Shown: piece after piece, positions 8,827 through 31,711 of the stretch
Layout: each line of letters starts with the position of its first letter
Numbering within the stretch: the stretch's first letter is position 1
Program-made: the position numbers and the translations under genes
Notes under the pieces: generated by a model
What the model was told of the DNA's origin: nothing
Database searches by the model: none
The model's input: only the letters and a program-made list of their open reading frames with translations
IMG/VR virus record: IMGVR_UViG_3300028840_002431
Span: 1 to 64,000 of that record
Length of the DNA: 64,000 bases
Strand: one strand, 5' to 3'

Positions 8827-8899
8827 CGTAAAATCTCTCCGAAACGAGCGTAGTCACGGGAGAGGTTTCACAAGAGAAAACCCAACCTTGAAACGGCTG

Positions 8900-12780: not shown

Positions 12781-12803
12781 GAGGGAATGTTCCAGCCTTA
12801 CGA

Positions 12804-13682
12804 CTAGACGCGAGTGACCACGATCCTGGTGAGGCCACGCGGGTTGAAAGCACCGATGCCCAGATTCTCGAAGCACGAGAAGCCGATGGTACGGGCCTTC
12901 GGATCGTCCGCCGACAGAACGGTGATCTCGGTGCGAACCGGGATACGGCCGAACTGCTCAGGCTCGCAGCAAACATACGCGAAGCCGGACGGTACCAGCC
13001 TGGATGTGATGATCTGAGCACCCCACAGAACGGCCTGGAGACCGGTCTTGAGCAAGGTGGCCTGACTCTCGATATCCAGAATGTCACGACCGAACTTACG
13101 GATGTCCGCGTAATCGACGGCGTTCATGTAGATGCGAGCGACACGGAGATCGTGCCTCTCAACCTCTGCGAACGCATCAGCGAGCACTGCGGGCGAAATG
13201 GGCGCAACCACCGGTACGTCTGGGTTGGTCTGGCCCGGAAGTGTGTCGAAGCCCGAGACAGCGATGCTGTCAAGGATTGCAAACACACGCTCGTCCTCTG
13301 CCGCCTGAATCTGAGCCTTGGCCAGATCCTGAGCACGCTCGATGAGATCGAAACGACGCTCCTTGATCTGGGTCAGGGGGATTTCAGGGTTCGAGGCAAT
13401 CTCAAACAAGGGGAAGATCACGCGACGCGGCTTCTGAATGGCGAGAATGTTCTCACCCTCTTCACCCACGACGAACGCCGTGACATCCGGGTCCTTGTCA
13501 TAGATCGGCAACGCACCGTCGGGCAGTTGCTCGACGAGGAAGGTCTTGCGACCAACGGCCGAGTAGTCCCGACGAAGACGGAGCGGTTGAATCATGGAAG
13601 CGGCGAGCTTCGCACGTCCAGCGGCCGTCTTGATGTACTCGCTGATGACTTGTTGCTTGACTTGGTTAGAAACTTGACCCAT
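12804..13682 (-). CDS. Major capsid protein (HK97 fold)
   Basis: 292 aa; position after protease, scaffold and decoration genes; FEIASNPEI, AQIQAAEDERVF and C-terminal NPRG resemble the mycobacteriophage Bxz1-type MCP as recalled. Confidence 0.9.
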   Translation of the reverse strand: MGQVSNQVKQQVISEYIKTAAGRAKLAASMIQPLRLRRDYSAVGRKTFLVEQLPDGALPIYDKDPDVTAFVVGEEGENILAIQKPRRVIFPLFEIASNPEIPLTQIKERRFDLIERAQDLAKAQIQAAEDERVFAILDSIAVSGFDTLPGQTNPDVPVVAPISPAVLADAFAEVERHDLRVARIYMNAVDYADIRKFGRDILDIESQATLLKTGLQAVLWGAQIITSRLVPSGFAYVCCEPEQFGRIPVRTEITVLSADDPKARTIGFSCFENLGIGAFNPRGLTRIVVTRV

Positions 13683-13692
13683 GGCTATCCTC

Positions 13693-14331
13693 CTAGGCCC
13701 TCATGTCAAGCACGAGTAGCGAACTGTTGGCGTCTGGAGCGACCTTGACAACGCCCATCAGGGTGCAGAACTCGATGGCGTTCTGACCTGCGACGTTGTA
13801 CTCATAGGCGTCCGCGAGTTGGTTAGTGAGGTATCCGTTCGCGCTGGCCCAGAGCTTTTGGCCCGGAGCGTACGTGATCGGGTTTCCAGCACCACCGCCA
13901 AGTAGGACCTGCGTCTCGTAAATCGAGACCGCAACACAGGAGCCGCTACCGCACACATACGGCCCTCGTCCCGAAGCCACACCAGGGGTGTTCTCGAAGG
14001 GGTTTCCCAAGGAATCGTTGAGATAGACTCCAAGGGGCAAGAGCGTGGCGCTGTAATCGCCGCCGATCTTGACCGGTCCGCCATGATAGTTGTTGCCAAT
14101 ATCAGGGCGCGTAAAGGCAATCGAGGCACCAAGGATACCTACCTTGGAAATCCCCGAAAGCGTCGTGGAGACGGTGTTGGCTGCGGTGACGACAGGAGGA
14201 TTCGCTTGCGTGAACGCATCCGGCGTCAACATACCCACTGAATTGCGGGTCATGACGTGGAGGAGTTGCACGCGACCGGAAGTCTCCCGGAAATCACCCG
14301 AGCTTTGACCGCCGATGGCAAAAGATGTCAT
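13693..14331 (-). CDS. Head decoration/cement protein
   Basis: Directly upstream of MCP, strong AAGGAG SD, Gly-rich beta-type sequence (TYAPGQKLWASANGYLT, MGVVKVAP). Confidence 0.7.
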   Translation of the reverse strand: MTSFAIGGQSSGDFRETSGRVQLLHVMTRNSVGMLTPDAFTQANPPVVTAANTVSTTLSGISKVGILGASIAFTRPDIGNNYHGGPVKIGGDYSATLLPLGVYLNDSLGNPFENTPGVASGRGPYVCGSGSCVAVSIYETQVLLGGGAGNPITYAPGQKLWASANGYLTNQLADAYEYNVAGQNAIEFCTLMGVVKVAPDANSSLLVLDMRA

Positions 14332-14420: not shown

Positions 14421-14436
14421 GGTGGGAAAGCGTTGA

Positions 14437-15642: not shown

Positions 15643-15687
15643 GGCAGAGTTCCTTTGTTGTTATGTCTGTGTGTTTGTATAAAAGAT

Positions 15688-17163: not shown

Positions 17164-17443
17164 CCCTACGCTTCAGTTCTAACACTAGCTGAGACAGCTT
17201 TTCGAACGACTGTCTAGCCTCTTTGCTGCTCTCGTAGGACTCTGACCACCCTTCGTCCAATAGAGGGTTCACACCTTTCAGATCCTTACCCAAATCTTTG
17301 AGGGACCCCTCAGTCTTACCTACAGAACGCGCTAAGTCCGTCATAGCTTTGTCGATATCACGGACCAACTCGTGTAAGCTCTTTCCAGCGCTTCTTGAAA
17401 GACCCCGACGGTCGTAAGTCGTATTTCCGCCTCTGCTCACCAC
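17156..17443 (-). CDS. Hypothetical coiled-coil protein
   Basis: 95-aa ORF overlapping both neighbours by a few nt. Confidence 0.55.
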   Translation of the reverse strand: MVSRGGNTTYDRRGLSRSAGKSLHELVRDIDKAMTDLARSVGKTEGSLKDLGKDLKGVNPLLDEGWSESYESSKEARQSFEKLSQLVLELKRRVG

Positions 17444-18159
17444 CCTAACGACTCCCCCTCAGGATTCAGAATGGAGTCAGATTTGATGAGGAACAAATCC
17501 TGCGGGCACGCAAAAAGCCGCACACATGCGCCATCCTTCATCTTGTAAGTGGTGCGACGCATCTGGGTTCCACACTTGGGGCAAGAGGGCTTCCCAGCAT
17601 CGATTTCCCTCTGGGTCGCCCGGTATGTGCGGTTCAGGGCAACCCAGTAGGCGGCGGTTTTCTCTACGTGTTGCTGAATCCTAAGGTCTCTCAGCCGCTC
17701 TGAGACGCGATAAAACTTCTCGACTTCATCGCGTAAGCTATCGTCCGAAACTCCGGAGGCGGCGTAACGATGCCACAGCGCATCGTAGGCTCCCACCTCA
17801 TTCGCGCCATCCTTCCAGAGTTTCGCCAACTCATGATAAAAACCAGCGGGTAATTCAGACCCTCTCCACGGGGAAGAGGATGCCCAACGTTTTCGAGCTT
17901 CGGCAATGTCGTAGCTCATGTAAGATTGATCGAACTCCGGAGGCATGTAACATGTGAGTTTGGGGTCCACCCGGATGATTTCGTCCGGCGACATCCGTTC
18001 GTTGCCATAAGGCCACTGAACGTCAACTTGCCCCAACCCACGGTGGACCGCTGTTACGCGGCCCACGAACGGAGAAAGCGTAGATCCAGACGCCGGGGCG
18101 AATCGTTCAACGACATCCCCGATGCTGTAATCCTTAACGAGTTTCCAGAAGTCGATCAA
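17437..18159 (-). CDS. Hypothetical protein with C-terminal zinc ribbon
   Basis: CPKCG...LFACPQD. Confidence 0.7.
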   Translation of the reverse strand: MIDFWKLVKDYSIGDVVERFAPASGSTLSPFVGRVTAVHRGLGQVDVQWPYGNERMSPDEIIRVDPKLTCYMPPEFDQSYMSYDIAEARKRWASSSPWRGSELPAGFYHELAKLWKDGANEVGAYDALWHRYAASGVSDDSLRDEVEKFYRVSERLRDLRIQQHVEKTAAYWVALNRTYRATQREIDAGKPSCPKCGTQMRRTTYKMKDGACVRLFACPQDLFLIKSDSILNPEGESLGW

Positions 18160-18176
18160 TTTGAATCCCGCTTACG

Positions 18177-21011
18177 TTATGGAGCGAGAGGGCGGCCGTT
18201 CTCTGCCTTGCCGTGATGCACGCCAGAGGAATCATCGTTCCCGTAGGCTTGCATATACGGCTCGTCAGCTTCCGTCTGATGCGGCTGCGACGGATTCTGG
18301 AAGGTGTCCATGTACGGCTCATCGCCGTCACGCTGAAGGACCTCCGCCTTCTTGTCGCTGGCTTGCAGAATCTGAGCTTGCCGAACGGTCATAGACTTCT
18401 CACCGTAGGCGGCGGTCTCGAAATCGTCAGCAACCCGATCGATCTCGTTCACGAGTTCCTTGGCTTCTTCGAACTTCATGCCCCACTTCTCGTGATTCTC
18501 CTGGATTGTGCTGGCAATACGATCCAGACGAGCCAGAACGCGGTCGGCAGCGCTTGTGTCAAACTCCACTTTGTTGGACATCTTTCTCCTCGCTAGTTTC
18601 TCTGTGGTTGTTAACAACGTCTCATCTTGAGGTTGTGGTTCTCCTGCAAGACGAGCTAACAAACTATTATAGGCGGTCGGATGGATTACACGGTCGTACC
18701 CCTCTGTCCGAATCGCCAAATCTAGAGCCGCCCGATACTGAGCGTCACGAGGCACTCCCTCGATGTTTACTGTCAACACCGGAGCCTGGAGCCATCTCTG
18801 AGCGGACGCCAAAATCTTGGAATACTCACGATCAGTTAGGTCTTGATCCCTAGGTTGTGACCACCCTCGATAAGGATCGACCGCGTTGGGTTCAACACCC
18901 CAATAGACAGCCTGACGATTTTTACCCATCGCAGAAGTATTGAAATAAATAGAAAAAGGATTGGCTGGCCTTAATTTTCCAGCGGCGTGAAGATGCCGGA
19001 CCACCACCCTGACCCTGGCCGAACTACTGGCAGTCCGACTCCTGAAAGAGTCCCAAAACTCTTTGGCCGTCGCTTCTAACTCCTGCGGCTCCTTGCCAAA
19101 CAAGTCATATCTAGGCGGTTTTCTAGGTTCTTGCGGCTCAGAAACACCCTGCTTCGCCAACCGATCTTCGGTGGACAGGGGCACTCTGGCTTTCTTACCC
19201 TCTGCTTTTCTTTCCCTATATCTGGCCATGGCTCTCTTGAACGCGCTCTTCGCTCGACTCAATCGTTTCTTATACGCACGCATCTCTTCTTGGTACTTTT
19301 TGAGGGCGGCTTCGTATTGGCGATTGTCTTCTTCGTCTAATAAATCTTGAATTTCCCTCTGTTTGTCGGGCACCAGGGCACCCAGGTTCCGCGTGATCCT
19401 TAGTTTAAAAAGTGTAGGAATATCGTTATCGACGCTGGGGTAATTTCCCTCTCGCTCCCTGAGGAAACGCATAGCCTTACCCAGTCTTGAAACGATTTCC
19501 TTTGGGGTTTGGTACTCAGATATATGTTCTTTGGAGTCCGGGTCTAAGAACCTCTTACGGGCGTCCTGGTAATCCATAGCCTGTAGATAACCCGTGGCCA
19601 CCTTCTGAGCGGCCGGGTCGGCCCCGAACCTCTTCAAAAGTTTCTTCACGGCTTCCGGTTCGACGGGCTTGTGATCGGTCTTTTCCAAGCCGCTATAAAA
19701 CAACACTTCGGACATTTTGGCGGCTCGTTGGGATCGAGCACTTGGGTTCTCGTCCTTCCCCGACAAAGTGAAACCAGCTAACTCTTCGGCCAAGTCAGGC
19801 GGGATTCCGTCTTTCTCTATACTTTTGGCTACTGCGTTTCGGGCCGCCAAATTCATGGCCACGGTCTGGACTTGATGCCGACGCTTGGCCTCTTCTTTTT
19901 CCTCCCCCTCAGGTAGCTCGTCATAACTGACACTTTTACCGTCGATCTCCACCATCTTGGGGTCCGGGACCTCGGAGGGGTCCATCGTGTAAGACTCCAA
20001 GTTCTCGCGAAGCTTGTCGAAATCCTCCGTCTCAACAGGAATCGACTTGGCGACGTTGAAGTCCGAGATCATCTTGTTAACTTCGTCCGGGTGGATCGGC
20101 GGCCTGATCAGCATCAAATCGAGCGCCACCTCCGGAGAAAACGTTCTCCGTAGCTGGTCACGAGAGTCCTTAAATTCAGCCTGAGTGTACGGACGAGTAG
20201 GAGAGCCAGGAGGAGGTGGAAGCTTCTTTTTCTTCGAAGGCTTCTTCTTAGGTTTTTCGTCCGAGACCTCCTCTGGAATTTCCTCTTCGCTCTCCTCGTC
20301 AGGAGCCTCCTCCTCGTCAGGAGCCTCTTCGGCCGGTACCTCGCCGGACGGTGGTGCGACCGGCTTCGTTGGCCCTTTCTTTTTCTTCGGCTTGAGCTTG
20401 AGGACACGCACCAAATCGCCCAATGTCTCAATTTCCTTGGGCAATGTACGGCCGTGGAAAACGTCTTTGACCTGATCTATGGAGGTCTCCGGGTTCGATA
20501 TAGCCCACGACCCCATGTCTTTCTTCGGGTTCAAGAAATCCTTGAGAAAATTGTCAAATTGGGCGTCGTTCGCCCGCATCGCGGCCAGAGACTTAGCCGC
20601 TTCAAGGTCCGTTTCCGGGGTTTTGACAGCCTTGGGTTTCGCTTCTTCCGGTTCCGCTTCTGGCTGTGGCTTCTCTTCCGGCTCTGGTTCCTCTTTCTTG
20701 ATCTCCTCGTATTTATGAGGCTCTTTCTTGAGCTTCTCTTTCGTGACCTGGACAGTCTTACTGGGGTCCTCCTTCAACCTAACAGTAATCAGGTCCTGCC
20801 TCTTCTTGGCCGTATGGACTGACCCGCCGACATCCTTATAATTATGAGAGAGGTCCTCGTCCTTCTGAGACAAGTCCTCGTCCTTATCAGGCTCTACCCG
20901 CTCACGACGCTTGTCGTGGCGAGGGGGCTTCACCTTGGGACTCTCTCGAACCAGACGCTCAGTCTCTTCGTCTTCGCGCTGAGAATCTGACTTGGTGGCG
21001 AACCGTTCCAT
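18177..21011 (-). CDS. Large head-module protein (944 aa) with probable internal in-frame starts
   Basis: Continuous ORF between portal and protease; internal ATGs at 18929 and at 18581 (the latter with GAGGAG SD). Confidence 0.75.
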   Translation of the reverse strand: MERFATKSDSQREDEETERLVRESPKVKPPRHDKRRERVEPDKDEDLSQKDEDLSHNYKDVGGSVHTAKKRQDLITVRLKEDPSKTVQVTKEKLKKEPHKYEEIKKEEPEPEEKPQPEAEPEEAKPKAVKTPETDLEAAKSLAAMRANDAQFDNFLKDFLNPKKDMGSWAISNPETSIDQVKDVFHGRTLPKEIETLGDLVRVLKLKPKKKKGPTKPVAPPSGEVPAEEAPDEEEAPDEESEEEIPEEVSDEKPKKKPSKKKKLPPPPGSPTRPYTQAEFKDSRDQLRRTFSPEVALDLMLIRPPIHPDEVNKMISDFNVAKSIPVETEDFDKLRENLESYTMDPSEVPDPKMVEIDGKSVSYDELPEGEEKEEAKRRHQVQTVAMNLAARNAVAKSIEKDGIPPDLAEELAGFTLSGKDENPSARSQRAAKMSEVLFYSGLEKTDHKPVEPEAVKKLLKRFGADPAAQKVATGYLQAMDYQDARKRFLDPDSKEHISEYQTPKEIVSRLGKAMRFLREREGNYPSVDNDIPTLFKLRITRNLGALVPDKQREIQDLLDEEDNRQYEAALKKYQEEMRAYKKRLSRAKSAFKRAMARYRERKAEGKKARVPLSTEDRLAKQGVSEPQEPRKPPRYDLFGKEPQELEATAKEFWDSFRSRTASSSARVRVVVRHLHAAGKLRPANPFSIYFNTSAMGKNRQAVYWGVEPNAVDPYRGWSQPRDQDLTDREYSKILASAQRWLQAPVLTVNIEGVPRDAQYRAALDLAIRTEGYDRVIHPTAYNSLLARLAGEPQPQDETLLTTTEKLARRKMSNKVEFDTSAADRVLARLDRIASTIQENHEKWGMKFEEAKELVNEIDRVADDFETAAYGEKSMTVRQAQILQASDKKAEVLQRDGDEPYMDTFQNPSQPHQTEADEPYMQAYGNDDSSGVHHGKAENGRPLAP

Positions 21012-21040
21012 CGGTAGAACAAATCTATCGAAAGACTAAT

Positions 21041-22834
21041 CTACCACCGCTCCTCTTCACCGCCGCCCTCGGGTTTCGGCACCTCTTTAAGCTTCAATGC
21101 CTTTTGGACCCTATCGACCACGTCTGTGTTTTCGATGATACGGTCTGCCACGCCATTGTAGATGCCCCGGAGAGCTTCGTTGAACAGGGCGTCGTTGACC
21201 GTAAACATGTCCTTCTCTAACTTGAGCTTGGTGTCGTCCGGATCGATGTTGAACATCTCCAAAATGAGACTGATGTCGATCGACCCCTTCTGGTAGAGAT
21301 TGAACAGGGCGTCATAAGTGTCCTGGGAGTCCCGCAGCGGTAGTCTCGTGAACGAGAGACGAGGGTATAACACCACCTCACCACCCCAGGCGTTCTTCTC
21401 CACAAACCCCTTGCGCCGGGCAATGGGCTTAAAGAGATAGTTCTCCACATATTCCTGAACCATCTCCCGCAAGAACATGTACCGGGTGTTTATGACTTCG
21501 AGCTTGAGCCTGTCTCCGGAGTACAACGTCTCTCCGGATAACAGGCTCTCAGTGACACCCAGACCCGCGTACAGTTGCTTGTCCGTGATGTCATATTCGC
21601 TCGACAAATCCAGAAGCCGGTCCCTGGCTCCGATTTCTTCCCAACGGACTTCATAGTTGGTGACAATCGAATAGTCAGGATCGACGAGGGCCAAATCGAC
21701 TTGCTCCCTCAAATCGTTAACATCCATCTCGGAAATTCTGTCGCCCCAGACGATACGCTTGGGCGTCATCGCCCTGGAAGCAATCTGGGTCTGAGCCTGA
21801 CGTAGCTTTTCCCGGTAGTACAACGTCCGGAGAACGCGGTCTAAGATGCTCTGCCCCAGGTCTTCGCCAGCACCACGTCGCCCGGCTAGGTAATAACAGA
21901 ATGACCCCTCATCCGGGTCTGTGCCCAAGGGAATGAGTTTACCGTTTTCAATATGATCCCGTACCTCTTCAGGCATCTCGCGGACCATCTCTTCCGCGAA
22001 CTCGTCACCGGACTTAGCCTGATTTATAAGAGCGCGGTCCCGCTCGGCCGGTATCAACTCAACACGTAGCTTATCCGTGAACGAATAAGTCGTGACTTTT
22101 ACCTGATCAATGGGCAGGAGGATGAGCCGATCCCATCCCTGATAGTACTCCTGGTAGTAAGATAGCTCCTGATCCTCACGGTCCTCTCGTTCGACCAGAC
22201 CTACCTCAGGCTCTTCTTTAGCCTCACCTGACTCCGTGACAATCGACTTAACACCAATAGCCTTCTCGTCATATCCGATGTCATCCGGAACCTTGACCTC
22301 GGAGTCTTCAGCAAACACGAAGACTCCGCCATCCAACCAGTAGTGGTGAACCATTGTGACGAGCCGCTGGAACAACTTTATACGGTCACACATGGTCGTG
22401 AAGAACCACAGAATGTAGTTGGCGTAGTCGTGAGGGTCTTTGAAGCCTTCCGGGCAAGTAGTTGGCTTCGGGGTAGCCAACCGGACCTTCGACAAGGGTA
22501 GTTCCGTATGCAGATCGATGGACTGCCCCACGATCGGGTCGGTGTTATAAAAGTGCCTGTAGATCTCCCGCTTCTCACGTAGAGACTGCGGCAACTCCAG
22601 AAAATCGGTAGACAACTGCGGGGAGAAGAACTGCCCGGCAGAAGCCATCGTCGTATTCCCGCTGCCGTAGCCGCCAAAGTCGCAATTGGCTATCTTCTGG
22701 AGCTTACGAGCCTCTAGCTCCTTTGGGGTCAAAGAACTGACCGGGCCTTTGGCAATGTACGGGGAAGGCATCGCCCGTGTGACCACGGTCGCGTAAGGAG
22801 CAGAAGTGGCGTTCGTGAACTTTCTAGTGGGCAT
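21041..22834 (-). CDS. Portal protein
   Basis: 597 aa downstream of terminase; YRHFYNTDPIVGQSIDLHTELP, SILDRVLRTLYYREKLRQAQ and LYAGLGVTESLLSG match large-phage portal patterns. Confidence 0.8.
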   Translation of the reverse strand: MPTRKFTNATSAPYATVVTRAMPSPYIAKGPVSSLTPKELEARKLQKIANCDFGGYGSGNTTMASAGQFFSPQLSTDFLELPQSLREKREIYRHFYNTDPIVGQSIDLHTELPLSKVRLATPKPTTCPEGFKDPHDYANYILWFFTTMCDRIKLFQRLVTMVHHYWLDGGVFVFAEDSEVKVPDDIGYDEKAIGVKSIVTESGEAKEEPEVGLVEREDREDQELSYYQEYYQGWDRLILLPIDQVKVTTYSFTDKLRVELIPAERDRALINQAKSGDEFAEEMVREMPEEVRDHIENGKLIPLGTDPDEGSFCYYLAGRRGAGEDLGQSILDRVLRTLYYREKLRQAQTQIASRAMTPKRIVWGDRISEMDVNDLREQVDLALVDPDYSIVTNYEVRWEEIGARDRLLDLSSEYDITDKQLYAGLGVTESLLSGETLYSGDRLKLEVINTRYMFLREMVQEYVENYLFKPIARRKGFVEKNAWGGEVVLYPRLSFTRLPLRDSQDTYDALFNLYQKGSIDISLILEMFNIDPDDTKLKLEKDMFTVNDALFNEALRGIYNGVADRIIENTDVVDRVQKALKLKEVPKPEGGGEEERW

Positions 22835-23244
22835 TAGCCTTCGCTACCCGTGCCGGTTGGCACTTGCGTAAGGGACTCCTCTACATAGGTTCTAATCAAA
22901 GATTCCATAGGGCTGCTTGTCGCCAGTCGTCTTTCCTCCCGCTGTTGCTGCCGTTGCTGCTTATGTTGCCGCTCACGTTCACGGTCGGCTGATTCAGCCC
23001 GTACCTCGGATAACCGGTCTAACACCTTCGAGGTCCGTATGGTCCGGTTCGAAACCTGCCGAACAGCGCCCGCGTACCTTATTACGGCGTTGGCGTAAGT
23101 CATGTAAATCGTTGTGCTATCGTCCACCGGGCTTCTCCTAACACGACGGTACAATGAGTCTGCCAAGGCGTGTACCCGGAAAGCCCGCGTCTTGATCTCA
23201 TCCTGGAGAGTGGCGACCTCCGAGACCACTTCTTCGTTACTCAT
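22834..23244 (-). CDS. Hypothetical helical protein
   Basis: Start reassigned to ATG 23244 (the longer ORF overlaps the upstream gene); TAATG coupling to the portal gene. Confidence 0.65.
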   Translation of the reverse strand: MSNEEVVSEVATLQDEIKTRAFRVHALADSLYRRVRRSPVDDSTTIYMTYANAVIRYAGAVRQVSNRTIRTSKVLDRLSEVRAESADRERERQHKQQRQQQREERRLATSSPMESLIRTYVEESLTQVPTGTGSEG

Positions 23245-23261
23245 ATGGTCAGGATTGCGAT

Positions 23262-23825
23262 TCACAGAGTGACCTGGATACCTAAGAAATGCTGATTGAC
23301 GGGCTGTGGCTTTTGTGCCGTCCGCCCAACGTTGAGTGCTGGAGCGAGAGGACTTCCAGAAAGGGTCAACTCGTCCTCCTTGGTCCACAGACCGCGCAAC
23401 GAGAAATACAAAGTATCGTTGACGTTATACACCAGTGGAACGAGCGGGCCGCCGCCTGTCCGAGACGCATACGTGTAATGCTCGTACGAAGAAGTCGATA
23501 TTAAGGCGCTCCCTCCACACAAGACAGCGTCCCCGTAGACAAGTTGTTGGCGGGTCATGGCCGTGTACTGGTCGGCCGACTCGTCCGATCCCCACAATAA
23601 GAACCCACCGAACTGCCCAGAGGAATACGTTACCACGAACTCGTCGGCGTCTGAGTTCACCCACTGGACCCCTTGGCCTCCCGGCCAACCGCCTTGTAAC
23701 ATCGCGTCGTCTACGCGAACCATGAAGGTGTCATCCTTCATGAACATCACGCAATCTCGGCCCCGGATTATATCAAACCCGTGAAAATCGACTTGAAACG
23801 AACCTATGGGCGGTGGAAAAGGCAT
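23262..23825 (-). CDS. Decoration-protein-like paralog 3 of 3
   Basis: GWPGGQGV.W, GFLLWGSDES, YEHYTY, YFSLRGLWT shared with two upstream neighbours. Confidence 0.75.
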   Translation of the reverse strand: MPFPPPIGSFQVDFHGFDIIRGRDCVMFMKDDTFMVRVDDAMLQGGWPGGQGVQWVNSDADEFVVTYSSGQFGGFLLWGSDESADQYTAMTRQQLVYGDAVLCGGSALISTSSYEHYTYASRTGGGPLVPLVYNVNDTLYFSLRGLWTKEDELTLSGSPLAPALNVGRTAQKPQPVNQHFLGIQVTL

Positions 23826-24343
23826 CAGATCAACGGTTGAACCATAAGGTATTGTTTGTTGTCAGCACTGGGAGCGTGAATCACGGTCCCCACGAAAATA
23901 GTGTTCGGCGCTCTCGGGTCCCCACTGATGGTCCACTCATCCTGGGGTGTGAAATACCCTCTCAGAGAGAAATGAAGCCGGGTTCCCGGCACATAAGCAT
24001 TCTCCACCAAAGGAGGAACCAGCCGGGACTGCAATGTGTAACGTTCGTACGTTAACGTTGAGATGATCCAGGTCCCAGCGCCTATAACCCCGAAGTTGTA
24101 CTTCGTCTGGTTCCCGGTATAGGAGATGAACTGATCACTGTCTTCATTGGAACCCCACAGCAAAAAGCCAGCGGCTTCTCCGTCCGAGAAGGTCACGGTG
24201 AAATTATCCGACCCGCTGTCGAACCATTTGACCCCCTGGCCACCGGGCCAGCCAGCTTGTGACATCGCCGCAGACAGATTGACCGGGACGGCCAAATCCT
24301 TGACGAATATAATCACATCTCGTTCGCGGACAATTTCTGTCAT
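23825..24343 (-). CDS. Decoration-protein-like paralog 2 of 3
   Basis: Same motifs; TGATG translational coupling. Confidence 0.75.
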   Translation of the reverse strand: MTEIVRERDVIIFVKDLAVPVNLSAAMSQAGWPGGQGVKWFDSGSDNFTVTFSDGEAAGFLLWGSNEDSDQFISYTGNQTKYNFGVIGAGTWIISTLTYERYTLQSRLVPPLVENAYVPGTRLHFSLRGYFTPQDEWTISGDPRAPNTIFVGTVIHAPSADNKQYLMVQPLI

Positions 24344-24864
24344 CAGAGAATAGCCTGTACAGTCAAATAATTATTACGAGATGGGACAGGACGTTGCACG
24401 ACTGATCCCACGAAGTTCCTGTTTGGCGCTCTAGGATCTCCCGAAAGCGTCCATTCGTCCTCGTTCGTCCAATAGCCTCTGAGCGAGAAAAGAAGACGGT
24501 CACTCGCGTTGTAGACGATTGGCACAAATGGACCACCCCCTGCCCTCGAAGCGTAGGTGTAACGTTCGTATGTTGAGGTCGTCATGAGCCAACCACCGAC
24601 ACCCAGAACAACGAACCTATACGTCGGCATGTTCCTGGTCATGGCTGTAAACTCGTCGGAAGATTCGTCAGAACCCCACAAGGCAAACCCGCCAAAACCG
24701 CCGTCGGTGATCGTGGTCAAGAAGTTGTCCTGTGTGGGTGGCACCCAGTTAAAACCCTGACCCCCAAGCCATCCAGCGGTGGCCACGCTTTCGGGCACTT
24801 CCGCCGTGAAGGTGAGAGCCTTCTGGAAAACGACAACATCACGTGAACGGAAAATTTCGGGCAT
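24343..24864 (-). CDS. Decoration-protein-like paralog 1 of 3
   Basis: Start reassigned to ATG 24864 (MPEIFRSRD, aligns with paralog N-termini). Confidence 0.75.
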   Translation of the reverse strand: MPEIFRSRDVVVFQKALTFTAEVPESVATAGWLGGQGFNWVPPTQDNFLTTITDGGFGGFALWGSDESSDEFTAMTRNMPTYRFVVLGVGGWLMTTSTYERYTYASRAGGGPFVPIVYNASDRLLFSLRGYWTNEDEWTLSGDPRAPNRNFVGSVVQRPVPSRNNYLTVQAIL

Positions 24865-24866
24865 CG

Positions 24867-25121
24867 TTATACCAGTTGATCCGACTTCTTCTTGCGTTCG
24901 GGCATCTGCCCCCAACCAGTGACAATCTCTTTCAACAGTTCAATATGAACCTGATCACCATTTACAATCTTCTCCCAAGAGCCAGCGCACCTCCTAAACA
25001 CCGATCGTATTGCCGAATAATCACGGAACCCCACCACGGTGTCGTCCGACACCATGTGCTTCACCATCTCCTTGATGACCTTATTGGCAAATACCTTCGG
25101 TTTTTTAGCTTCTTTGTACAT
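24867..25121 (-). CDS. Hypothetical protein
   Basis: 84-aa ORF filling the gap between terminase and paralog 1. Confidence 0.6.
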   Translation of the reverse strand: MYKEAKKPKVFANKVIKEMVKHMVSDDTVVGFRDYSAIRSVFRRCAGSWEKIVNGDQVHIELLKEIVTGWGQMPERKKKSDQLV

Positions 25122-25123
25122 AC

Positions 25124-27166
25124 CTATCTCACACCACGAAGACGTAACCCCAAACGGCGCGGGTCTACACGATCCGTGAAACCTCCATGCTTGCGTGCTC
25201 GCATCATTTGATAGCGACCCGGCGTCATGCCCGCGCCCATGTGGCGGGCACCCTCCTTGCCGTACACGAATTTCTCATCGCGCATACGCTCCGAAGTTAA
25301 CCATACCGCTCGCACAAAAGCGTCACTACGGTCGTCGTGGTGGCCCACGGTCTGCGGAGCCTCCACGACCACGATGTTCCTGGACATCTGTTGCGCTTGA
25401 AGTTCCAGTAGCTCCTCAATGAACGCCGAATGCCTACTACCTTGTTTGACTGGGAAATCGTACAAACGGAGACTCTCGTCGAACATCAGCATCTTCGTGT
25501 TCTGGTAGATACGTGACGTGAGGTCCCTCTGGAAGTACTCGCTCTTGAACTGTGTCAGCCCCTTCTTGAGAAGAGCCTGTTCCAACGGAATCCCGTTCCA
25601 ACGGTCAAAAAGACCGTGTGTTATGTGGAACCTCTTTGTTAGAACGTCGATCCAGTGGCCGATTTCGTCGAAGTCTAGACGGCTCGCGTCGCCCAAGAGT
25701 TTGCAGTACGGGGTTGTGAAATTATTACCCAGGTGTGGGTTCGACTCGCGCCAGTCAACACCGGCTTGCCAGTATTCGTGGTAAGCCAGCACAATCTTGT
25801 TGTTTTCGGCGCATGTTATCGCGATGGCCGTGCCGTCTCCCATCAACCCGATATCTATACCCATCTGGTAAGGGTAACGCGGAATCCCGACGACCTGAGG
25901 ACGCAAGTTGGGATCTACACATGAAACAAGATCCTCTTCCCGCTCGATCCAACCACGCACACGATCCGAGAACTGCGCTCCATGCTCTGTCATGAACACG
26001 TTGGCGTCCTCGTGGTACTTCTGCTTGTAGTAAGACTTCGGGATTGTCGGGTTCACCTCCCAGGTAGGGGCCTGGATTGCCAAAATGTTCTCAGACCCGA
26101 CACCCCTGCTCATCGCCAGATGGAATAGATCGTAGAACTTACCCACCTTATTGAGCGGAGACGAAATTGTGATGATTCGAGACTCGACAGGGTACATTTC
26201 CCCGTCGGACATCTTCATCGGCATCCCGTCGTCTCCCTTGGGAGAGAAGGCAGCCGTGCTGGGCGTTACAGCGTCGTATATGTCCTTGGCCGACGACTGG
26301 CCCGTGTCCTGGTAGTGGGCCATCTCGTCCATAATCACGACGATATTACCCGACCCACGAAGGCCCTTGGCTATACAACTCTTGAAGGTGACACGTAGAG
26401 TTGCCTTACCATTGAAACTGACGAACTTGCCGTCTTGGTGACGAAGCGTGGGTCCGTAGCGATCCAGGTCGTAGGGGGTCCTGAACTGAATGTGTGACAG
26501 GGTGTTGTTGGCGATATACGGCTTGAAGTAGTCACACTTCGCTAAGTGTGTAGTCACCTCGTTGAAAAGAATACCCGCCTGATCCTTATCGGTGGCCACC
26601 GACGTGATCTGGATGCGGTTCCCGTTAGGTAGCCCGTAATACTCCTGGGGGTTGAATAAATTTAGTAAACGGTAGACTTCGTAGCTGGCGAATATACCAC
26701 TGAGTGTTGTCTTCCCGGCACGACGGCCGATGGCCAAAACTAACTCGCGCCGTTCGTGATCTTGCTCCCCGATGTTACAACGACCCTCGTTGTACAGATA
26801 ATGGAGATACTCTTTCTCGGTGAACTCGTAGAGGAGATCCTCACCGAACATGTCGGTGACTCTTATGGTCTTTTCTTCGTCGTCTAACGGAAGATGGTAG
26901 TAGAGCTTGACGATAAAGCGCTGGGCCGGGAACAACTTCATCCCGATTCCCCAGGCTTGCTCGATGTACTCTATGATATTAAAAATACGGGGCTGAAACG
27001 GACGTACCTCGTCCTCGTCAAAACCGTCCGGGTCGAGTTCCCCGTCCGCTATCTTGTTCTGTAGCTGGATATCAAGCTGTTTTTGCTCTACAGCTTGCTT
27101 GGCGCGAACTCCAGCATCTCTAATGAGTGCTGAAACCCCTGCTCCGGATCGCTTTCTCTGTGCCAC
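25124..27166 (-). CDS. terL: Terminase large subunit
   Basis: Walker A IGRRAGKT, Walker B IVVIMDE, RNase H-like MGIDIG...D and HHDDRSDA. Confidence 0.92.
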   Translation of the reverse strand: MAQRKRSGAGVSALIRDAGVRAKQAVEQKQLDIQLQNKIADGELDPDGFDEDEVRPFQPRIFNIIEYIEQAWGIGMKLFPAQRFIVKLYYHLPLDDEEKTIRVTDMFGEDLLYEFTEKEYLHYLYNEGRCNIGEQDHERRELVLAIGRRAGKTTLSGIFASYEVYRLLNLFNPQEYYGLPNGNRIQITSVATDKDQAGILFNEVTTHLAKCDYFKPYIANNTLSHIQFRTPYDLDRYGPTLRHQDGKFVSFNGKATLRVTFKSCIAKGLRGSGNIVVIMDEMAHYQDTGQSSAKDIYDAVTPSTAAFSPKGDDGMPMKMSDGEMYPVESRIITISSPLNKVGKFYDLFHLAMSRGVGSENILAIQAPTWEVNPTIPKSYYKQKYHEDANVFMTEHGAQFSDRVRGWIEREEDLVSCVDPNLRPQVVGIPRYPYQMGIDIGLMGDGTAIAITCAENNKIVLAYHEYWQAGVDWRESNPHLGNNFTTPYCKLLGDASRLDFDEIGHWIDVLTKRFHITHGLFDRWNGIPLEQALLKKGLTQFKSEYFQRDLTSRIYQNTKMLMFDESLRLYDFPVKQGSRHSAFIEELLELQAQQMSRNIVVVEAPQTVGHHDDRSDAFVRAVWLTSERMRDEKFVYGKEGARHMGAGMTPGRYQMMRARKHGGFTDRVDPRRLGLRLRGVR

Positions 27167-27169
27167 ACG

Positions 27170-27781
27170 TCACCGAACCAAATTTTCTGCTTTCTCTTCC
27201 CAACCCTCCATCTCGGTCTGGAGTTTGTTGAAGAAGAGATCAAGCTGCTCAGGGGCTAAGGTTTCCTCGGCGGCGACACGAATCATATCGGTCCACAGTT
27301 TGAAAATCTTTTGGAACTTCTCGCTGTAGATATCCACCTGATCGAAGCCGATCTTACGCATCTCCATTTCAATGTCAGCGATTTTCTTCATCGCATCGAT
27401 ACGACGCGCCGAGATCCTGGTGATGTCCTTCCCCATTATCTCGTTCTGTTTACGCTGATAATGCAAAGCCGCTGCTTCGCGGGCGACCTCTGCCTTAAGG
27501 GTCGCCAACAGCTTTATAGGATCGGCTTCTGCCGCGCTCTTAACGACCGGGTCATCCGCGATGAACTCTTCCCGCTCCTCAGAAGTCTCCTCGTAGTAGT
27601 CCAACTGATCCTGGCTCGGCTTGTTGAACTTGCTGCCAGGGGGACGAGTGCGTTGCCCGGCCGCTCGACCGCCAGCCGGTACCTTGTCCTTGTTGTTCGC
27701 GGCCAGGAACAGCTTCGGACGCGGTTTCTCCTCTGTCCCCTCTTCCGGTACCTTTCCTTCTTCGTCTGGCATATTAGTCAT
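27170..27781 (-). CDS. Candidate terminase small subunit
   Basis: 203-aa helical protein immediately upstream of terL; positional inference only. Confidence 0.45.
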   Translation of the reverse strand: MTNMPDEEGKVPEEGTEEKPRPKLFLAANNKDKVPAGGRAAGQRTRPPGSKFNKPSQDQLDYYEETSEEREEFIADDPVVKSAAEADPIKLLATLKAEVAREAAALHYQRKQNEIMGKDITRISARRIDAMKKIADIEMEMRKIGFDQVDIYSEKFQKIFKLWTDMIRVAAEETLAPEQLDLFFNKLQTEMEGWEEKAENLVR

Positions 27782-28178
27782 TACCTTCTACCGGAGGAGT
27801 CCCACCCCCGCCTTCCGTTTCGATCAGGTATTGGCTCAGGTTGCTTACAGTGTCGTACCCCTTGTCTTTGGGGACCTGTTTGTCCAACACCTTCTCCATG
27901 TCCGTGTAGTCGTCAGCGTCTCCCGGCCACCCCTTGGTAACGTAATTGTATACGCTGACCTGAGAGGGTAACGGTTTGAAAACGTCTTTCGGACGGACAT
28001 CGTCTTTGTCTGGTTTCACCGTATCTTCACGCTCGTCCGTCGAGCCGTAATCCTCAACGACCTCGCGAGAAAGATCCTTTGGCTTGTTTACAGGCTGGGT
28101 AGAATCCCGCGCCTCTTCGCGGGCACTTTCCGCGATTTGAAAACGAGCCGCGACACGTAATGTTAAAGGAGATGTCAA
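27774..28178 (-). CDS. Hypothetical acidic protein with N-terminal LRVAARFQIA motif
   Basis: 134 aa; ATGA overlap with the upstream gene. Confidence 0.7.
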   Translation of the reverse strand: MTSPLTLRVAARFQIAESAREEARDSTQPVNKPKDLSREVVEDYGSTDEREDTVKPDKDDVRPKDVFKPLPSQVSVYNYVTKGWPGDADDYTDMEKVLDKQVPKDKGYDTVSNLSQYLIETEGGGGTPPVEGND

Positions 28179-30133
28179 AGCTTGACCTTCCCGGTTCCGA
28201 GTTGCACATCCACGATGTTAGGGTCCGGAGCCTCGTTAACAGAAACATCCATACCCTGTTGCATCTGGAACTCAGCCAAAGCAGAAGCCCCGTTGTTGAC
28301 CAATGAACCATATGAAACGTCCGTCGAGCGGCCGGACGCCAAGACTTCGCGCTGTTGGGCGGCCTTGTCCACATACGGAGGCTCGTCCACCAGACGCTTG
28401 TTGAGCTTTGAGCAGACTCCGGTGTTGACCTGATGGATACAACTTTCGCACTTCGAGCCTTGCTTCACATACCCGACCATACGAGTCCGGTGGAGACGGA
28501 CAGCTTCTTCACAACCCTTGCCGTAGTCGTCGTAAACCGACGGGTCCACGTAGAAGACGCCCTGTAGTCCTTGTTCGGCTACAACCTTCTTGAGTTCGTC
28601 CTTCGCGGCGACGAGATCCCGAACCTCAAACCGCGTCTTGAGAGCATCCAAAAGGTCGTTGCCGTACAAACCCTCGTTCATGTATTTTGACGCTTGTTTT
28701 GCCACGTCCTTCCGGGTCAAACCACTGGTCACATGGCCAACCTCCTGACCATGAAAACCTTCCATGAAACCCATACGGGTCGGGGCCACTTGAGAGTACG
28801 AAGCCTTCTTGGTCGCTTCGTGGATGGTCCTAAGCGCTTGTGCGGGGGTGTCGCCCCACTTTCGAGGAACGGCTTCCCATGGCGGCAACCGGCCAGCGGT
28901 TCGGTGTTCCTGGAGAACGGCATCTACTGTGTCCTGAGTAACGACCTCAGACGCATCCTTAATTAAAGGCTTGCCGTAAAGGAGGCATCGAGTCTTGTTG
29001 TAGATACACGAGGCACACTTGTCCCCGGCCACAATCGCCCTGACACCAGGGTTGTGTTTGGCCAGGAAATCAGCACCCGTGTGACAGTCGGCAAAACTGG
29101 CTTGCTTCGAGTAGACCACACCGTAGAGGCCAGACTCCTTGAACGTAGGTCCCCAGTAAGTGTGGGTGCGAGTCAGGAGGTCGGTATCAAAAGCCAACTT
29201 GAGCGAGCGCACCAACTCCTCGTGAGACAACCCCTTCACCATCTCCCGGTGAAGGAAAGCCACAACAGGACGGCCCTCTGCCGCCTGTTTGTCCCCCACG
29301 GGCTGGGACAACTGCTTTCGCACCTCTTGTTCGGGAACGGTGGCCTTGACCGTCCGGTCGAGACCCTGGCCCTCGTAATCATCCGTGCTCGACGTTTTCG
29401 GGGCAAGGAACGCTTGTCTGATCCGCTCTTTCGGGTCCGACGCCGAAGCTTTTACAGAACATCCGCAACCCTCTTGGTTACGCTCGATCGCTTCGGCCAA
29501 TTCATCAGAATACGGGATCTCGAACTGGATCTCTTTGTGGAAGACACCACAGTGCTTCCCGGTAGCTGTCTGACAGGCGTGAGAACAACCTTCGCACGCT
29601 TCTTTGCCCAAAATATACAGGGCCTTGTCCGCGTACCGTCGGACAAACTCCACCTGTTTGCCGCCTTGGGCACAGGCCGGGAAATCAGCGGCCGAAACGT
29701 AAAGGTCGCCCAAAAGCCCTCTCTCTTGCATGACTTCGGCAAGAACTTCACGATGATTGTGTAAATCGTCCATCGCGAAACGCTTTGTGAGTTCATCCCG
29801 AATCCGCCGAGAGTCGCTCGACTGCATCAAGGTAAACCGGGCGATCCTACGGATGGTATCGGCCTCTTCCCTGAGACGCCCGTGAGCCTGAGACATATCC
29901 CCCATGGTCCTCGGATCGTCGATGCCAGGGTTGGGAAGCGAAGAATTTGGGGTCAGATACGCGGAAGGGGACTCTCCTTCCCTGGCCCACAGAGCTTCAA
30001 GATCGGGCTGGATGTCCAAATTTTGTTTGGGCAACGTATCCATCTCACGATACGAGGTCTCGTCCACGTCGAGCCAATCCAAATTGGACACAGACGAGTC
30101 TTTCAAGAAATTATCGAGATCAAACGCTGACAT
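28175..30133 (-). CDS. Protein with three internal Cys-rich repeats
   Basis: Three E.GL.G..Y...C...CxxC...C...K.[IL] units. Confidence 0.75.
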   Translation of the reverse strand: MSAFDLDNFLKDSSVSNLDWLDVDETSYREMDTLPKQNLDIQPDLEALWAREGESPSAYLTPNSSLPNPGIDDPRTMGDMSQAHGRLREEADTIRRIARFTLMQSSDSRRIRDELTKRFAMDDLHNHREVLAEVMQERGLLGDLYVSAADFPACAQGGKQVEFVRRYADKALYILGKEACEGCSHACQTATGKHCGVFHKEIQFEIPYSDELAEAIERNQEGCGCSVKASASDPKERIRQAFLAPKTSSTDDYEGQGLDRTVKATVPEQEVRKQLSQPVGDKQAAEGRPVVAFLHREMVKGLSHEELVRSLKLAFDTDLLTRTHTYWGPTFKESGLYGVVYSKQASFADCHTGADFLAKHNPGVRAIVAGDKCASCIYNKTRCLLYGKPLIKDASEVVTQDTVDAVLQEHRTAGRLPPWEAVPRKWGDTPAQALRTIHEATKKASYSQVAPTRMGFMEGFHGQEVGHVTSGLTRKDVAKQASKYMNEGLYGNDLLDALKTRFEVRDLVAAKDELKKVVAEQGLQGVFYVDPSVYDDYGKGCEEAVRLHRTRMVGYVKQGSKCESCIHQVNTGVCSKLNKRLVDEPPYVDKAAQQREVLASGRSTDVSYGSLVNNGASALAEFQMQQGMDVSVNEAPDPNIVDVQLGTGKVKL

Positions 30134-30135
30134 AG

Positions 30136-31710: not shown

Positions 31711-31711
31711 T

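What the first reader, a model, noticed from the sequence alone, without database searches (positions are those of the whole stretch)
23262..24864. Three translationally coupled paralogs that look like diverged head-decoration proteins
Seen: the three genes between terL and portal are mutual paralogs, and their C-halves align by eye with the decoration gene next to MCP: YETQVLLGGGAGNPITYAPGQKLWASANGYLTN...MGVVKVAP versus YERYTYASRAGGGPFVPIVYNASDRLLFSLRGYWTN...VGSVVQRP and YVPGTRLHFSLRGYFT...VGTVIHAP. Known: decoration proteins such as lambda gpD are trimers. Inference: a 1:1:1 heterotrimeric minor decoration or portal-vertex cement, or a fibre anchor, at special capsid sites. Coupling by TGATG overlaps fits equimolar synthesis.
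Basis: partly seen in the sequence, partly recalled or inferred. Interest (0 to 1): 0.7.

Follow-up and report, generated by a model that had tools for sequence, protein, structure and literature searches.

The report
Three-paralog capsid cement trimer in huge phage
A 416-kb phage carries three tightly linked sister genes with the fold of lambda-gpD-type capsid cement proteins; they appear to form one mixed A-B-C trimer, which no phage structure found here shows and which recalls the herpesvirus triplex.

Summary
Three minus-strand genes, A (24343-24864), B (23825-24343) and C (23262-23825), are 49-54% identical. They are joined by TGATG stop/start overlaps and lie between terL and portal of a 416.5-kb phage-G-like phage.

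- An AF2 model of A (pLDDT 87.7) matches only phage head decoration/cement proteins of the beta-tulip (gpD-like) class (VIA Z 11.4-8.5; next unrelated hit 2.7).
- The gene next to MCP has the same fold.
- The two families align over about 76 C-terminal columns (hhalign 89%, E 2e-6).

The triplet is ancient and kept intact. All 102 related loci with three full copies have the order A-B-C. Where only A+C stay together, a third copy lies elsewhere on the same contig.

A predicted A+B+C ring passes its controls (0.80 vs 0.49). Covariation at the predicted contacts is directional and inter-paralog (A-B z 4.6, B-C 5.9, C-A 2.9; the reverse pairings and B-B, C-C below 1). This favours a 1:1:1 heterotrimer over three homotrimers, though A-A also scores 3.1.

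MCP and the adjacent decoration gene have strong Shine-Dalgarno sites. The triplet has none, which suggests a low-copy component. Its site on the capsid (penton- or portal-adjacent) is inference only. No virion, expression or stoichiometry data exist.

The parts
24343..24864 (-). Paralog A (173 aa), first gene of the triplet; beta-tulip (gpD-like) decoration fold
   Evidence: ORF. AF2 model pLDDT 87.7, pTM 0.84. VIA Z 11.4-8.5 to HFTV1, BB1, FCWL1, T1, Pam3, TW1, Patience, Pa193 and E217 decoration proteins. Position-1 copies form one clade.
23825..24343 (-). Paralog B (172 aa), second gene of the triplet
   Evidence: 49% identical to A. Position-2 copies form an exact clan with support 0.93 in the 64-locus tree. 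In the first, 169-copy tree they were only the unresolved remainder.
23262..23825 (-). Paralog C (187 aa), third gene; about 15 extra N-terminal residues, and the two Trp conserved in A and B (A92, A138) replaced
   Evidence: 53% identical to A. Position-3 copies form one clade, support 0.96. Group consensus sequences.
24341..24345 (-). TGATG stop/start overlap between A and B
   Evidence: Sequence read directly. A-to-B overlaps of 1 or 4 nt occur in 30 of 50 non-identical related loci.
23823..23827 (-). TGATG stop/start overlap between B and C
   Evidence: Sequence read directly. For B-to-C, 14 of 50 related loci overlap and 31 of 50 have gaps of 0-15 nt.
24867..25121 (-). Conserved 84-aa ORF between terL and A; function unknown
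   Evidence: Found directly upstream of the triplet in most related loci. No Pfam, PHROG or NCBIfam match. A 2-nt gap to terL and a 2-nt gap to A.
22834..23244 (-). Conserved 136-aa ORF between C and portal; function unknown. Its stop overlaps the portal start.
   Evidence: Conserved downstream of the triplet in most related loci. Start ATG at 23244 read from the sequence. The 184-aa GTG ORF listed is an upstream extension that overlaps C.
25124..27166 (-). Large terminase subunit, upstream boundary of the block
   Evidence: phrog_2 E 1.4e-17, phrog_17415 E 5.3e-17. Pfam TerL_ATPase is weak.
21041..22834 (-). Portal protein, downstream boundary of the block
   Evidence: phrog_16240 E 3.2e-30.
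13693..14331 (-). Presumed major decoration (cement) protein (212 aa), directly upstream of MCP; distant homologue of A, B and C
   Evidence: Same position as the experimentally assigned phage G decoration gene gp26 (PMC12484599). AF2 model pLDDT 76.7. VIA Z 10.4-7.1 to the same decoration proteins. hhalign to the A/B/C family 89%, E 2.3e-6. Strong Shine-Dalgarno site.
12804..13682 (-). Major capsid protein (292 aa)
   Evidence: phrog_2522 E 1.9e-49. 40% identical to phage G gp27, 48% to Tunturi_5 MCP, 84% to LR745208. GGAGG Shine-Dalgarno site.

Best explanation
A, B and C are three anciently diverged paralogs of the beta-tulip (lambda gpD-like) class of trimeric head cement/decoration proteins. 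This is the class to which the gene beside the MCP also belongs.

They most likely assemble head-to-tail into one A:B:C heterotrimer. An invariant Trp (A numbering W40) on one face of each subunit inserts into a pocket on the next subunit (residues about 119-123, 151-158, 168-172).

The genes sit in a Shine-Dalgarno-less, translationally coupled run: terL, 84-aa ORF, A, B, C, 136-aa ORF, portal. This would give matched, low amounts of the three chains. In contrast, the MCP and its adjacent decoration gene have strong ribosome-binding sites.

The inferred role is a minor capsid cement trimer for sites whose three binding environments are not equivalent, such as quasi-threefold positions next to pentons or the portal of a very large (phage-G-like) capsid. 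The adjacent-to-MCP protein would cement the bulk lattice.

Status of each step:
- Shown: paralogy, fold class, conservation of the triplet and its order, tight linkage.
- Supported by prediction and covariation only: the heterotrimer.
- Inferred: low copy number, presence on the capsid, and which sites.
For: Fold:
- The model of A (pLDDT 87.7) has phage head decoration proteins as its first 23 VIA-ranked entries. Z values: 11.4 HFTV1, 11.1 BB1, 10.2 FCWL1, 9.9 T1, 9.6 Pam3, 9.4 TW1, 6.4 SHP, 5.9 P74-26 gp87, 4.4 lambda gpD. The next entry drops to 2.7. Foldseek top hits are the same proteins.
- The decoration gene beside MCP gives the same hit list.
- It aligns to the A/B/C profile at 89%, E 2.3e-6.

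Conservation:
- 64 of 76 IMG/VR loci carry three tandem copies.
- With metagenome loci added, 102 loci have three full copies, all in the order A-B-C by group HMM.
- Copies group by position in trees, while within-group identity falls to about 40%.
- In both long contigs where only A+C are adjacent, a third copy lies elsewhere on the same contig (L024+L078, L043+L035).

Complex: complex prediction on A+B+C gave ipSAE 0.80 against a best control of 0.49. That mark was reached by 58 of 80 solved complexes and 2 of 110 mismatched pairs. The runs share at least 88% of contacts and the partner pLDDT is at least 79.

Covariation over 64 non-redundant loci at 27 model contact column pairs, against entropy-matched nulls:
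- alpha(A)-beta(B) z 4.6, alpha(B)-beta(C) z 5.9, alpha(C)-beta(A) z 2.9.
- The three reverse pairings and B-B, C-C are all below 1.
- The zero-offset register is the peak for A-B and B-C when the partner column is slid.

Coupling and expression:
- TGATG overlaps.
- 30 of 50 A-to-B and 14 of 50 B-to-C junctions overlap in relatives; most of the rest are at most 15 nt.
- There is no SD-like motif before terL, the 84-aa ORF, A, B or C (portal has only a weak AAGG, and the X start was not scored because of a coordinate slip), versus GGAGG before MCP and AAGGAGAGAGG before the decoration gene.

Background (review PMC7602432, read): all phage beta-tulip decoration proteins listed there are trimers at threefold or quasi-threefold sites bound through an N-terminal arm, and the herpesvirus triplex is a beta-tulip heterotrimer.
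Against: - There is no experimental evidence of any kind: no virion proteomics, no transcript data (no RNA run was listed), and no cultured member of the clade carrying the triplet.
- The complex predictor would probably also accept homotrimers of 50%-identical paralogs. Only one job was allowed, so hetero and homo assemblies were not compared.
- It was given my row-matched alignments, so its subunit order is not independent of the covariation signal.
- Covariation rests on 64 related sequences. Counts are sequences, not independent events. A-A also scores z 3.1.
- The independent subset of 21 new loci replicates only partly (z 2.2, 1.5, 0.4).
- At patch level the A/C direction is ambiguous.
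- The key knob residue and much of the interface are conserved in all three paralogs, so mixed or homo assemblies are sterically conceivable.
- Sequence similarity to the MCP-adjacent protein covers only the C-terminal half.
- There is no significant similarity to the experimentally assigned phage G gp26.
- The capsid site is pure inference.
Confidence: 0.55

Rival explanations
1. Three separate homotrimers: A3, B3 and C3 each cement a different class of quasi-equivalent site on the very large capsid (or act at different assembly stages). The tight linkage only reflects co-regulation.
For: Every solved phage beta-tulip decoration protein in the hit list and in the review is a homotrimer. A-A contact covariation is z 3.1. 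The Trp knob and many interface residues are shared by all three paralogs. LR745208 and more distant relatives have a single copy, which must act alone.
Against: B-B and C-C contact covariation is nil, while A-B, B-C and C-A (one direction only) are elevated. The fixed gene order and overlapping stop/start codons are what obligate heteromers typically show (inference). The heterotrimer model passes its controls.
Confidence: 0.25
2. A beta-tulip trimer used off the shell lattice: a portal/neck collar component, a base or anchor for head fibres, or an assembly chaperone, rather than a capsid cement.
For: The triplet sits beside portal and terminase here. In another lineage it lies directly upstream of four unannotated structural-block genes, homologues of window 8900-10027, 7651-8826, 6805-7644 and 6353-6793. 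The phi29 head-fibre base gp8.5 shares the fold (Z 7.1). The phi29 gp12 C-terminal fragment, which from recollection is an autochaperone domain, matches the MCP-adjacent protein (Z 6.4).
Against: The best full-length matches (Z 9-11) are lattice cement proteins. A, B and C have no fibre-like extension (172-187 aa, all within the fold). A conserved N-terminal arm with invariant R8 and D9 resembles the capsid-binding Dec-arm described for this class (PMC7602432).
Confidence: 0.15
3. Functionally redundant tandem duplicates with no division of labour (dosage or drift).
For: The tandem arrangement and about 50% mutual identity are compatible with simple duplication.
Against: The three orthogroups with fixed order are kept across lineages whose orthologues have diverged to about 40% identity. 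Group-specific conserved residues exist, for example A121 S/G/N, A48 F/F/R and A123 R/R/I-P. The third copy is retained even when displaced.
Confidence: 0.05

Closest known systems
Beta-tulip (lambda gpD / P21 SHP-like) trimeric head decoration-cement proteins, e.g. TW1 gp56, T1, Pam3, FCWL1, Borrelia phiBB1, HFTV1, P74-26 gp87
   Same: Same fold over nearly the whole chain (VIA Z 11.4-4.4). Predicted head-to-tail trimer. Short conserved N-terminal arm. Size of 130-190 aa. Encoded in the head module.
   Different: No sequence-family membership: no Pfam, PHROG or NCBIfam hit. Three co-retained paralogs instead of one gene. Predicted mixed trimer rather than a homotrimer. In this window, not adjacent to the MCP gene.
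Phage G gp26, the experimentally assigned decoration protein of the nearest cultured megaphage
   Same: The window's MCP is 40% identical to phage G gp27. Its 13693-14331 gene occupies the gp26 position directly upstream of MCP. gp26 was assigned by cryo-EM and proteomics according to PMC12484599.
   Different: No significant profile similarity of gp26, or of Tunturi_5 gp333, to either the MCP-adjacent family or the A/B/C family. tblastn found no A homologue in either phage G or Tunturi_5 at E up to 1.
Herpesvirus triplex (HSV-1 VP19C/VP23; HCMV Tri1/Tri2A/Tri2B)
   Same: A heterotrimeric beta-tulip cement sitting between capsomers of a large HK97-fold capsid (PMC7602432; bioRxiv 10.1101/216911). 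It works the way the A:B:C trimer is proposed to work.
   Different: The triplex is 1:2 from two genes, with large extra domains, and is essential for assembly. Here there are three genes at a presumed 1:1:1, in compact 172-187-aa chains. No direct structural comparison to triplex chains appeared among the hits. This is an analogy, not membership.
phi29 head-fibre protein gp8.5 (N-terminal base)
   Same: The beta-tulip trimeric base matches the model of A (Z 7.1-7.2).
   Different: gp8.5 carries a long helical fibre. A, B and C have no extension.

Membership tests
Beta-tulip (gpD-like) head decoration/cement proteins | Beta-tulip barrel joined to a mixed alpha/beta subdomain | tested here: met
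   For the AF2 model of A, the first 23 VIA-ranked entries are all phage head decoration proteins (Z 11.4 down to 4.3). The next entry is at 2.7. Foldseek probability is about 1.0 for the same set, although E-values are only about 4e-3.
Beta-tulip (gpD-like) head decoration/cement proteins | Forms a trimer, head to tail | tested here: met
   By prediction only. A+B+C ipSAE 0.80 against a best control of 0.49; the mark was reached by 58 of 80 solved complexes and 2 of 110 mismatched pairs. The predicted contacts carry covariation.
Beta-tulip (gpD-like) head decoration/cement proteins | Binds the outer capsid surface at threefold or quasi-threefold sites through an N-terminal arm | not testable with these tools
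   Indirect only: a conserved N-terminal segment (R6, R8, D9) with lower model confidence.
Beta-tulip (gpD-like) head decoration/cement proteins | Match to an existing sequence family model of decoration proteins | tested here: not met
   No Pfam, PHROG or NCBIfam family at E up to 1 / 0.1 / 1 for A, B, C or the MCP-adjacent protein. The ESM Atlas feature search gave no usable hit.
Beta-tulip (gpD-like) head decoration/cement proteins | Present in virions | not testable with these tools
   There is no proteome for any triplet-carrying phage, and no RNA run was listed.
Same family as the window's MCP-adjacent decoration gene (13693-14331) | Significant profile-profile similarity | tested here: met
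   hhalign 79.6%, E 1.5e-5, and 89.1%, E 2.3e-6 with the merged A+B+C profile. This covers the C-terminal ~76 columns only; the global alignment fails. A HMMER profile search of 1.84 billion representatives returned no hit longer than 197 aa, so it did not reach that 212-aa family.
Phage G gp26-type decoration protein | Sequence similarity to gp26 | tested here: not met
   hhalign probabilities of 1% or less for both families against gp26 and against Tunturi_5 gp333.
Herpesvirus triplex | Heterotrimer of beta-tulip proteins cementing capsomers | tested here: inconclusive
   The heterotrimer is supported by prediction and directional covariation, but homotrimers are not excluded. Composition differs (three genes at 1:1:1 versus two genes at 1:2). 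I treat this as an analogy only.

The most novel reading that the evidence does not exclude
Phage-G-like huge phages carry an obligate A:B:C heterotrimeric beta-tulip cement: a phage counterpart of the herpesvirus triplex. It would have evolved by triplication of a homotrimeric decoration gene and be used at symmetry-special (penton- or portal-adjacent) positions of a very large capsid, while a fourth, distantly related paralog cements the regular lattice.
Probability: 0.3. Interest if true: 0.75.

Novelty: new variant of a known kind. Interest (0 to 1): 0.6.

Why it matters
Phage beta-tulip cement proteins solved so far are homotrimers, as far as the structures hit here and the review read here show. 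The only heterotrimeric beta-tulip cement known is the herpesvirus triplex.

A conserved three-gene heterotrimer in the largest known phage capsids would show two things. Subunit specialisation of the cement would have arisen independently, or early, on the phage side of the HK97 lineage. It would also give a concrete handle on how capsids of triangulation number around 50 (T = 52 for phage G, from recollection) deal with non-equivalent threefold sites.

In practice, it assigns a fold and a testable role to an unannotated family. That family has at least 671 clusters at 90% identity and 69 at 50%. It occurs in huge phages from sediments, soils and waters, together with the MCP-adjacent family.

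Tried and rejected
- **Family libraries.** Pfam, PHROGs and NCBIfam gave nothing for A, B, C, the MCP-adjacent protein, the 84-aa ORF or the 136-aa ORF. The ESM Atlas feature search gave no usable hit.
- **Cultured phages.** tblastn of A against 50,697 phage records found only one partial single-copy hit, in LR745208. Phage G and Tunturi_5 have none.
- **Phage G gp26 and Tunturi_5 gp333.** Profile comparison against both was not significant. The link of the MCP-adjacent gene to an experimentally assigned decoration protein therefore rests on synteny and fold only.
- **HMMER profile search.** The search of 1.84 billion representatives reached distant 180-197-aa single-copy relatives but returned no hit longer than 197 aa, so it did not reach the 212-aa MCP-adjacent family.
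- **Invalid covariation table.** The first table after adding metagenome loci is invalid, because hmmalign --trim shifted the numbering of C. It was redone.
- **Group-specific residues.** A search for strictly fixed group-specific differences at an 80% threshold found almost none. Looser per-column profiles show several at the interface.
- **IQ-TREE.** The run with bootstraps timed out, so FastTree was used.
- **Third copies.** Four incomplete two-copy contigs were searched for a third copy and none was found, but those records are only 16-53% complete.
- **Neighbours of the alternative position.** A PHROG scan of these genes gave no function.
- **Transcripts.** No RNA-seq run was listed, so expression ratios could not be measured and read laying was not used.
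- **Literature.** Searches for a heterotrimeric phage decoration or cement protein found none; the hits concerned baseplates, tail tips and herpesviruses.
Full report
**What the window is.** The window is the first 64 kb of a 416,539-bp IMG/VR virus record, estimated 87% complete. Its major capsid protein (12804-13682, minus strand; phrog_2522, E 1.9e-49) is 84% identical to that of the 485-kb uncultured phage LR745208. It is 48% identical to Tunturiibacter phage Tunturi_5 (309 kb) and 40% identical to Bacillus phage G gp27 (498 kb). So this is a phage-G-like huge phage. Its head module reads on the minus strand in this order:
- a 203-aa ORF
- terL (25124-27166)
- an 84-aa ORF (24867-25121)
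- A (24343-24864), B (23825-24343), C (23262-23825)
- a 136-aa ORF (22834-23244)
- portal (21041-22834)
- a 944-aa protein and a 240-aa ORF
- a 491-aa protein with a head-maturation-protease match (phrog_18299, E 2.5e-9)
- an acidic 401-aa putative scaffold
- the 212-aa gene at 13693-14331
- MCP

**Checking the observation.** The three ORFs are real and are mutual paralogs. A/C is 53% identical (E 4e-63) and A/B is 49% identical (E 3e-57), with 60 invariant columns. Both junctions read TGATG. A starts at the ATG at 24864; the longer TTG ORF from the ORF listing is an extension. The whole run from terL to portal is packed, with gaps of 2, 2, -1, -1, 17 and -1 nt. The quoted similarity to the 13693-14331 product is weak in pairwise BLASTP (36% over 45 aa, E 6e-4).

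It holds at profile level. An A-family profile against a profile of the MCP-adjacent family gives 79.6%, E 1.5e-5 over 74 columns. A merged A+B+C profile gives 89.1%, E 2.3e-6 over 76 columns. Only the C-terminal halves align; the global alignment fails. Separately, phmmer with the MCP-adjacent protein hit B-type copies in two related loci (E 1e-4 and 8e-4).

**What the proteins are.** No Pfam, PHROG or NCBIfam family matches any of them. An AF2 model of A, built on 41 homologues, is confident (pLDDT 87.7, pTM 0.84). Foldseek against the PDB returns almost only phage capsid decoration or cement chains. VIA-align gives these Z scores:

| Decoration protein | Z |
|---|---|
| HFTV1 | 11.4 |
| Borrelia phiBB1 | 11.1 |
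| FCWL1 | 10.2 |
| T1 | 9.9 |
| Pam3 | 9.6 |
| TW1 gp56 | 9.4 |
| Patience | 8.9 |
| Pa193 | 8.7 |
| E217 | 8.5 |
| phi29 gp8.5 base | 7.1-7.2 |
| SHP | 6.4 |
| P74-26 gp87 | 5.9 |
| lambda gpD | 4.4 |

The next entry drops sharply to Z 2.7. This is the beta-tulip class. Its members are trimers at threefold or quasi-threefold capsid sites and bind through an N-terminal arm (review PMC7602432). The model of the MCP-adjacent protein is less confident (pLDDT 76.7) but hits the same set (Z 10.4-7.1; lambda gpD 4.0-4.1). That gene occupies the position of phage G gp26. gp26 was assigned as the capsid decoration protein by cryo-EM and proteomics, according to PMC12484599. Profile comparison to gp26 itself is not significant. 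The genome has one MCP gene and one copy of the MCP-adjacent gene.

**How conserved the triplet is.**
- The A family has at least 671 clusters at 90% identity and 69 representatives at 50% identity.
- In 76 IMG/VR loci, 64 have three tandem copies, 8 have two and 4 have one.
- After adding metagenome loci, 102 loci have three full-length copies. Every one is ordered A-B-C by group-specific HMMs.
- In trees, copies group by position. In the 169-copy tree, position-1 and position-3 copies each form one clade. In the 64-locus tree B is an exact clan (0.93), C is exact, and A is complete apart from two divergent members.
- Within-group identity falls to about 40%, so the triplication predates the sampled radiation.
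- Six two-copy loci are A+C. In the two long contigs of this kind, the third copy lies elsewhere on the same contig (L024+L078 and L043+L035). The others are 16-53% complete and cannot be judged.
- The context terL, 84-aa ORF, triplet, 136-aa ORF, portal holds in at least 57 loci.
- In a second lineage the triplet sits about 3.5 kb downstream of the decoration gene and MCP. There it lies directly upstream of homologues of window ORFs 8900-10027, 7651-8826, 6805-7644 and 6353-6793.
- LR745208 has a single C-like copy inside that same block.
- More distant 180-197-aa relatives are single-copy in unrelated phage contexts.

So a single gene, presumably encoding a homotrimer, is the likely ancestral state, and the triplet is derived.

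**Heterotrimer or homotrimers.** One complex job was allowed. A+B+C, each given a 46-row alignment with matched loci, scored ipSAE 0.80 against a best control of 0.49. That mark was reached by 58 of 80 solved complexes and 2 of 110 mismatched pairs. The three runs share at least 88% of contacts, and the partner pLDDT is at least 79. The model is a head-to-tail ring:
- The "alpha" face (A numbering 16-19, 39-48, 56-58, 89-90) includes the invariant W40.
- It packs against a "beta" face of the neighbour (119-123, 151-158, 168-172).

This alone cannot separate hetero from homo assemblies, because the paralogs are 50% identical. I therefore measured APC-corrected mutual information at the 27 contact column pairs, for all nine alpha(X)-beta(Y) combinations, against entropy-matched random pairs. 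Over 64 non-redundant loci:

| Combination | z |
|---|---|
| alpha(A)-beta(B) | 4.6 |
| alpha(B)-beta(C) | 5.9 |
| alpha(C)-beta(A) | 2.9 |
| alpha(A)-beta(A) | 3.1 |
| the three reverse hetero pairings, B-B and C-C | all below 1 |

The three elevated hetero combinations are exactly one consistent ring, and the one the model drew. Sliding the beta column by 1-4 positions puts the peak at zero offset for A-B and B-C, with i±2 shoulders as expected for strands.

Caveats on this evidence:
- The first 43 loci alone show the pattern (z 2.9, 3.8, 3.5). The 21 new loci alone replicate it only partly (2.2, 1.5, 0.4).
- At patch level, the direction between A and C is ambiguous.
- Sequences are not independent events.
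- The A-A signal leaves room for some A homotrimer.
- An earlier table was invalid because of a numbering shift and was replaced.

Several interface columns are group-specific, for example A121 S / G / N-Q, A48 F / F / R and A123 R / R / I-P.

**Expression signals.** MCP and the adjacent decoration gene are preceded by GGAGG and AAGGAGAGAGG. No SD-like motif precedes terL, the 84-aa ORF, A, B or C. Portal has only a weak AAGG, and the start of the 136-aa ORF was not scored because of a coordinate slip in that script. In 50 non-identical related triplets, the A-to-B junction overlaps by 1 or 4 nt in 30 and is at most 15 nt in 11 more. The B-to-C junction overlaps in 14 and is at most 15 nt in 31. 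This fits termination-reinitiation coupling, with matched and probably low output, like the low-copy proteins flanking the triplet. That is inference, since no transcript data could be found.

**Best reading.** A, B and C are diverged beta-tulip cement proteins. They most likely form a 1:1:1 heterotrimer made in small, matched amounts. The MCP-adjacent paralog is the bulk cement. Why a heterotrimer? A trimer next to a penton or the portal faces three non-equivalent capsomer junctions, and three specialised subunits could fit such a site. This is a hypothesis with no direct support here.

The closest functional analogue is the herpesvirus triplex, a beta-tulip heterotrimer (PMC7602432; bioRxiv 10.1101/216911). 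Among phage structures hit here, and in the literature searched, I found only homotrimeric examples.

**Verdict.** This is a new variant of a known kind, of moderate to good interest, and directly testable by co-expression and native mass spectrometry.

Noticed in passing
L010:6516-7316, L016, L028, L038, L066 (between A and B); L060 (between B and C): In seven related loci (L011 duplicates L010) a 110-266-aa Cys-rich ORF is inserted between two paralogs; L079 has an unrelated 111-aa insert. By eye the Cys-rich ORF has CxxC...CxxC...DFDHV...CxxCH motifs, which look HNH-like. In L010 its start and stop overlap the neighbours' stop and start, so coupling is preserved. Pfam gives no hit at E 0.01.
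   Followed up: partly
L020:2354-5746 (terL) and L009:8010-11288 (portal): Relatives have terL and portal ORFs of about 1,100 aa that carry inteins with LAGLIDADG endonuclease domains. terL: Intein_splicing E 2e-14 and LAGLIDADG_3 E 2e-19. Portal: LAGLIDADG_3 E 2.4e-10 and Hint_2 E 4e-4. Several other loci show similarly long ORFs.
   Followed up: partly
window 12804-14331 versus LR745208 (L004) and L042, L058, L063: MCP is 79-84% identical between these phages, while the adjacent decoration protein is only 37-42% identical. The cement evolves far faster than the shell protein it binds.
   Followed up: no
window 24867-25121 and 22834-23244: Two small ORFs (84 aa and 136 aa) flank the triplet and are conserved with it in most related loci. 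No family match was found. They may belong to the same assembly or to packaging.
   Followed up: partly
window 6353-10027: Four unannotated minus-strand genes (375, 391, 279 and 146 aa) downstream of MCP. Their homologues directly follow the triplet in another lineage and flank the single copy in LR745208. There is no PHROG match.
   Followed up: partly
window 18177-21011 and 14437-15642: A 944-aa protein after portal has a long Lys/Glu/Pro-rich low-complexity N-terminal half. A 401-aa Asp/Glu/Gln-rich protein sits upstream of the decoration gene and is a likely scaffold. Both are unannotated.
   Followed up: no
window 22834-23388: The 184-aa GTG ORF listed here overlaps the 3' end of C by 127 nt. 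The conserved protein starts at the ATG at 23244, so the longer ORF is an artefact of ORF listing.
   Followed up: yes
window 12800-31800: Shine-Dalgarno motifs are strong before MCP and the decoration gene. They are weak or absent before most other head-module genes, including terL and portal.
   Followed up: partly
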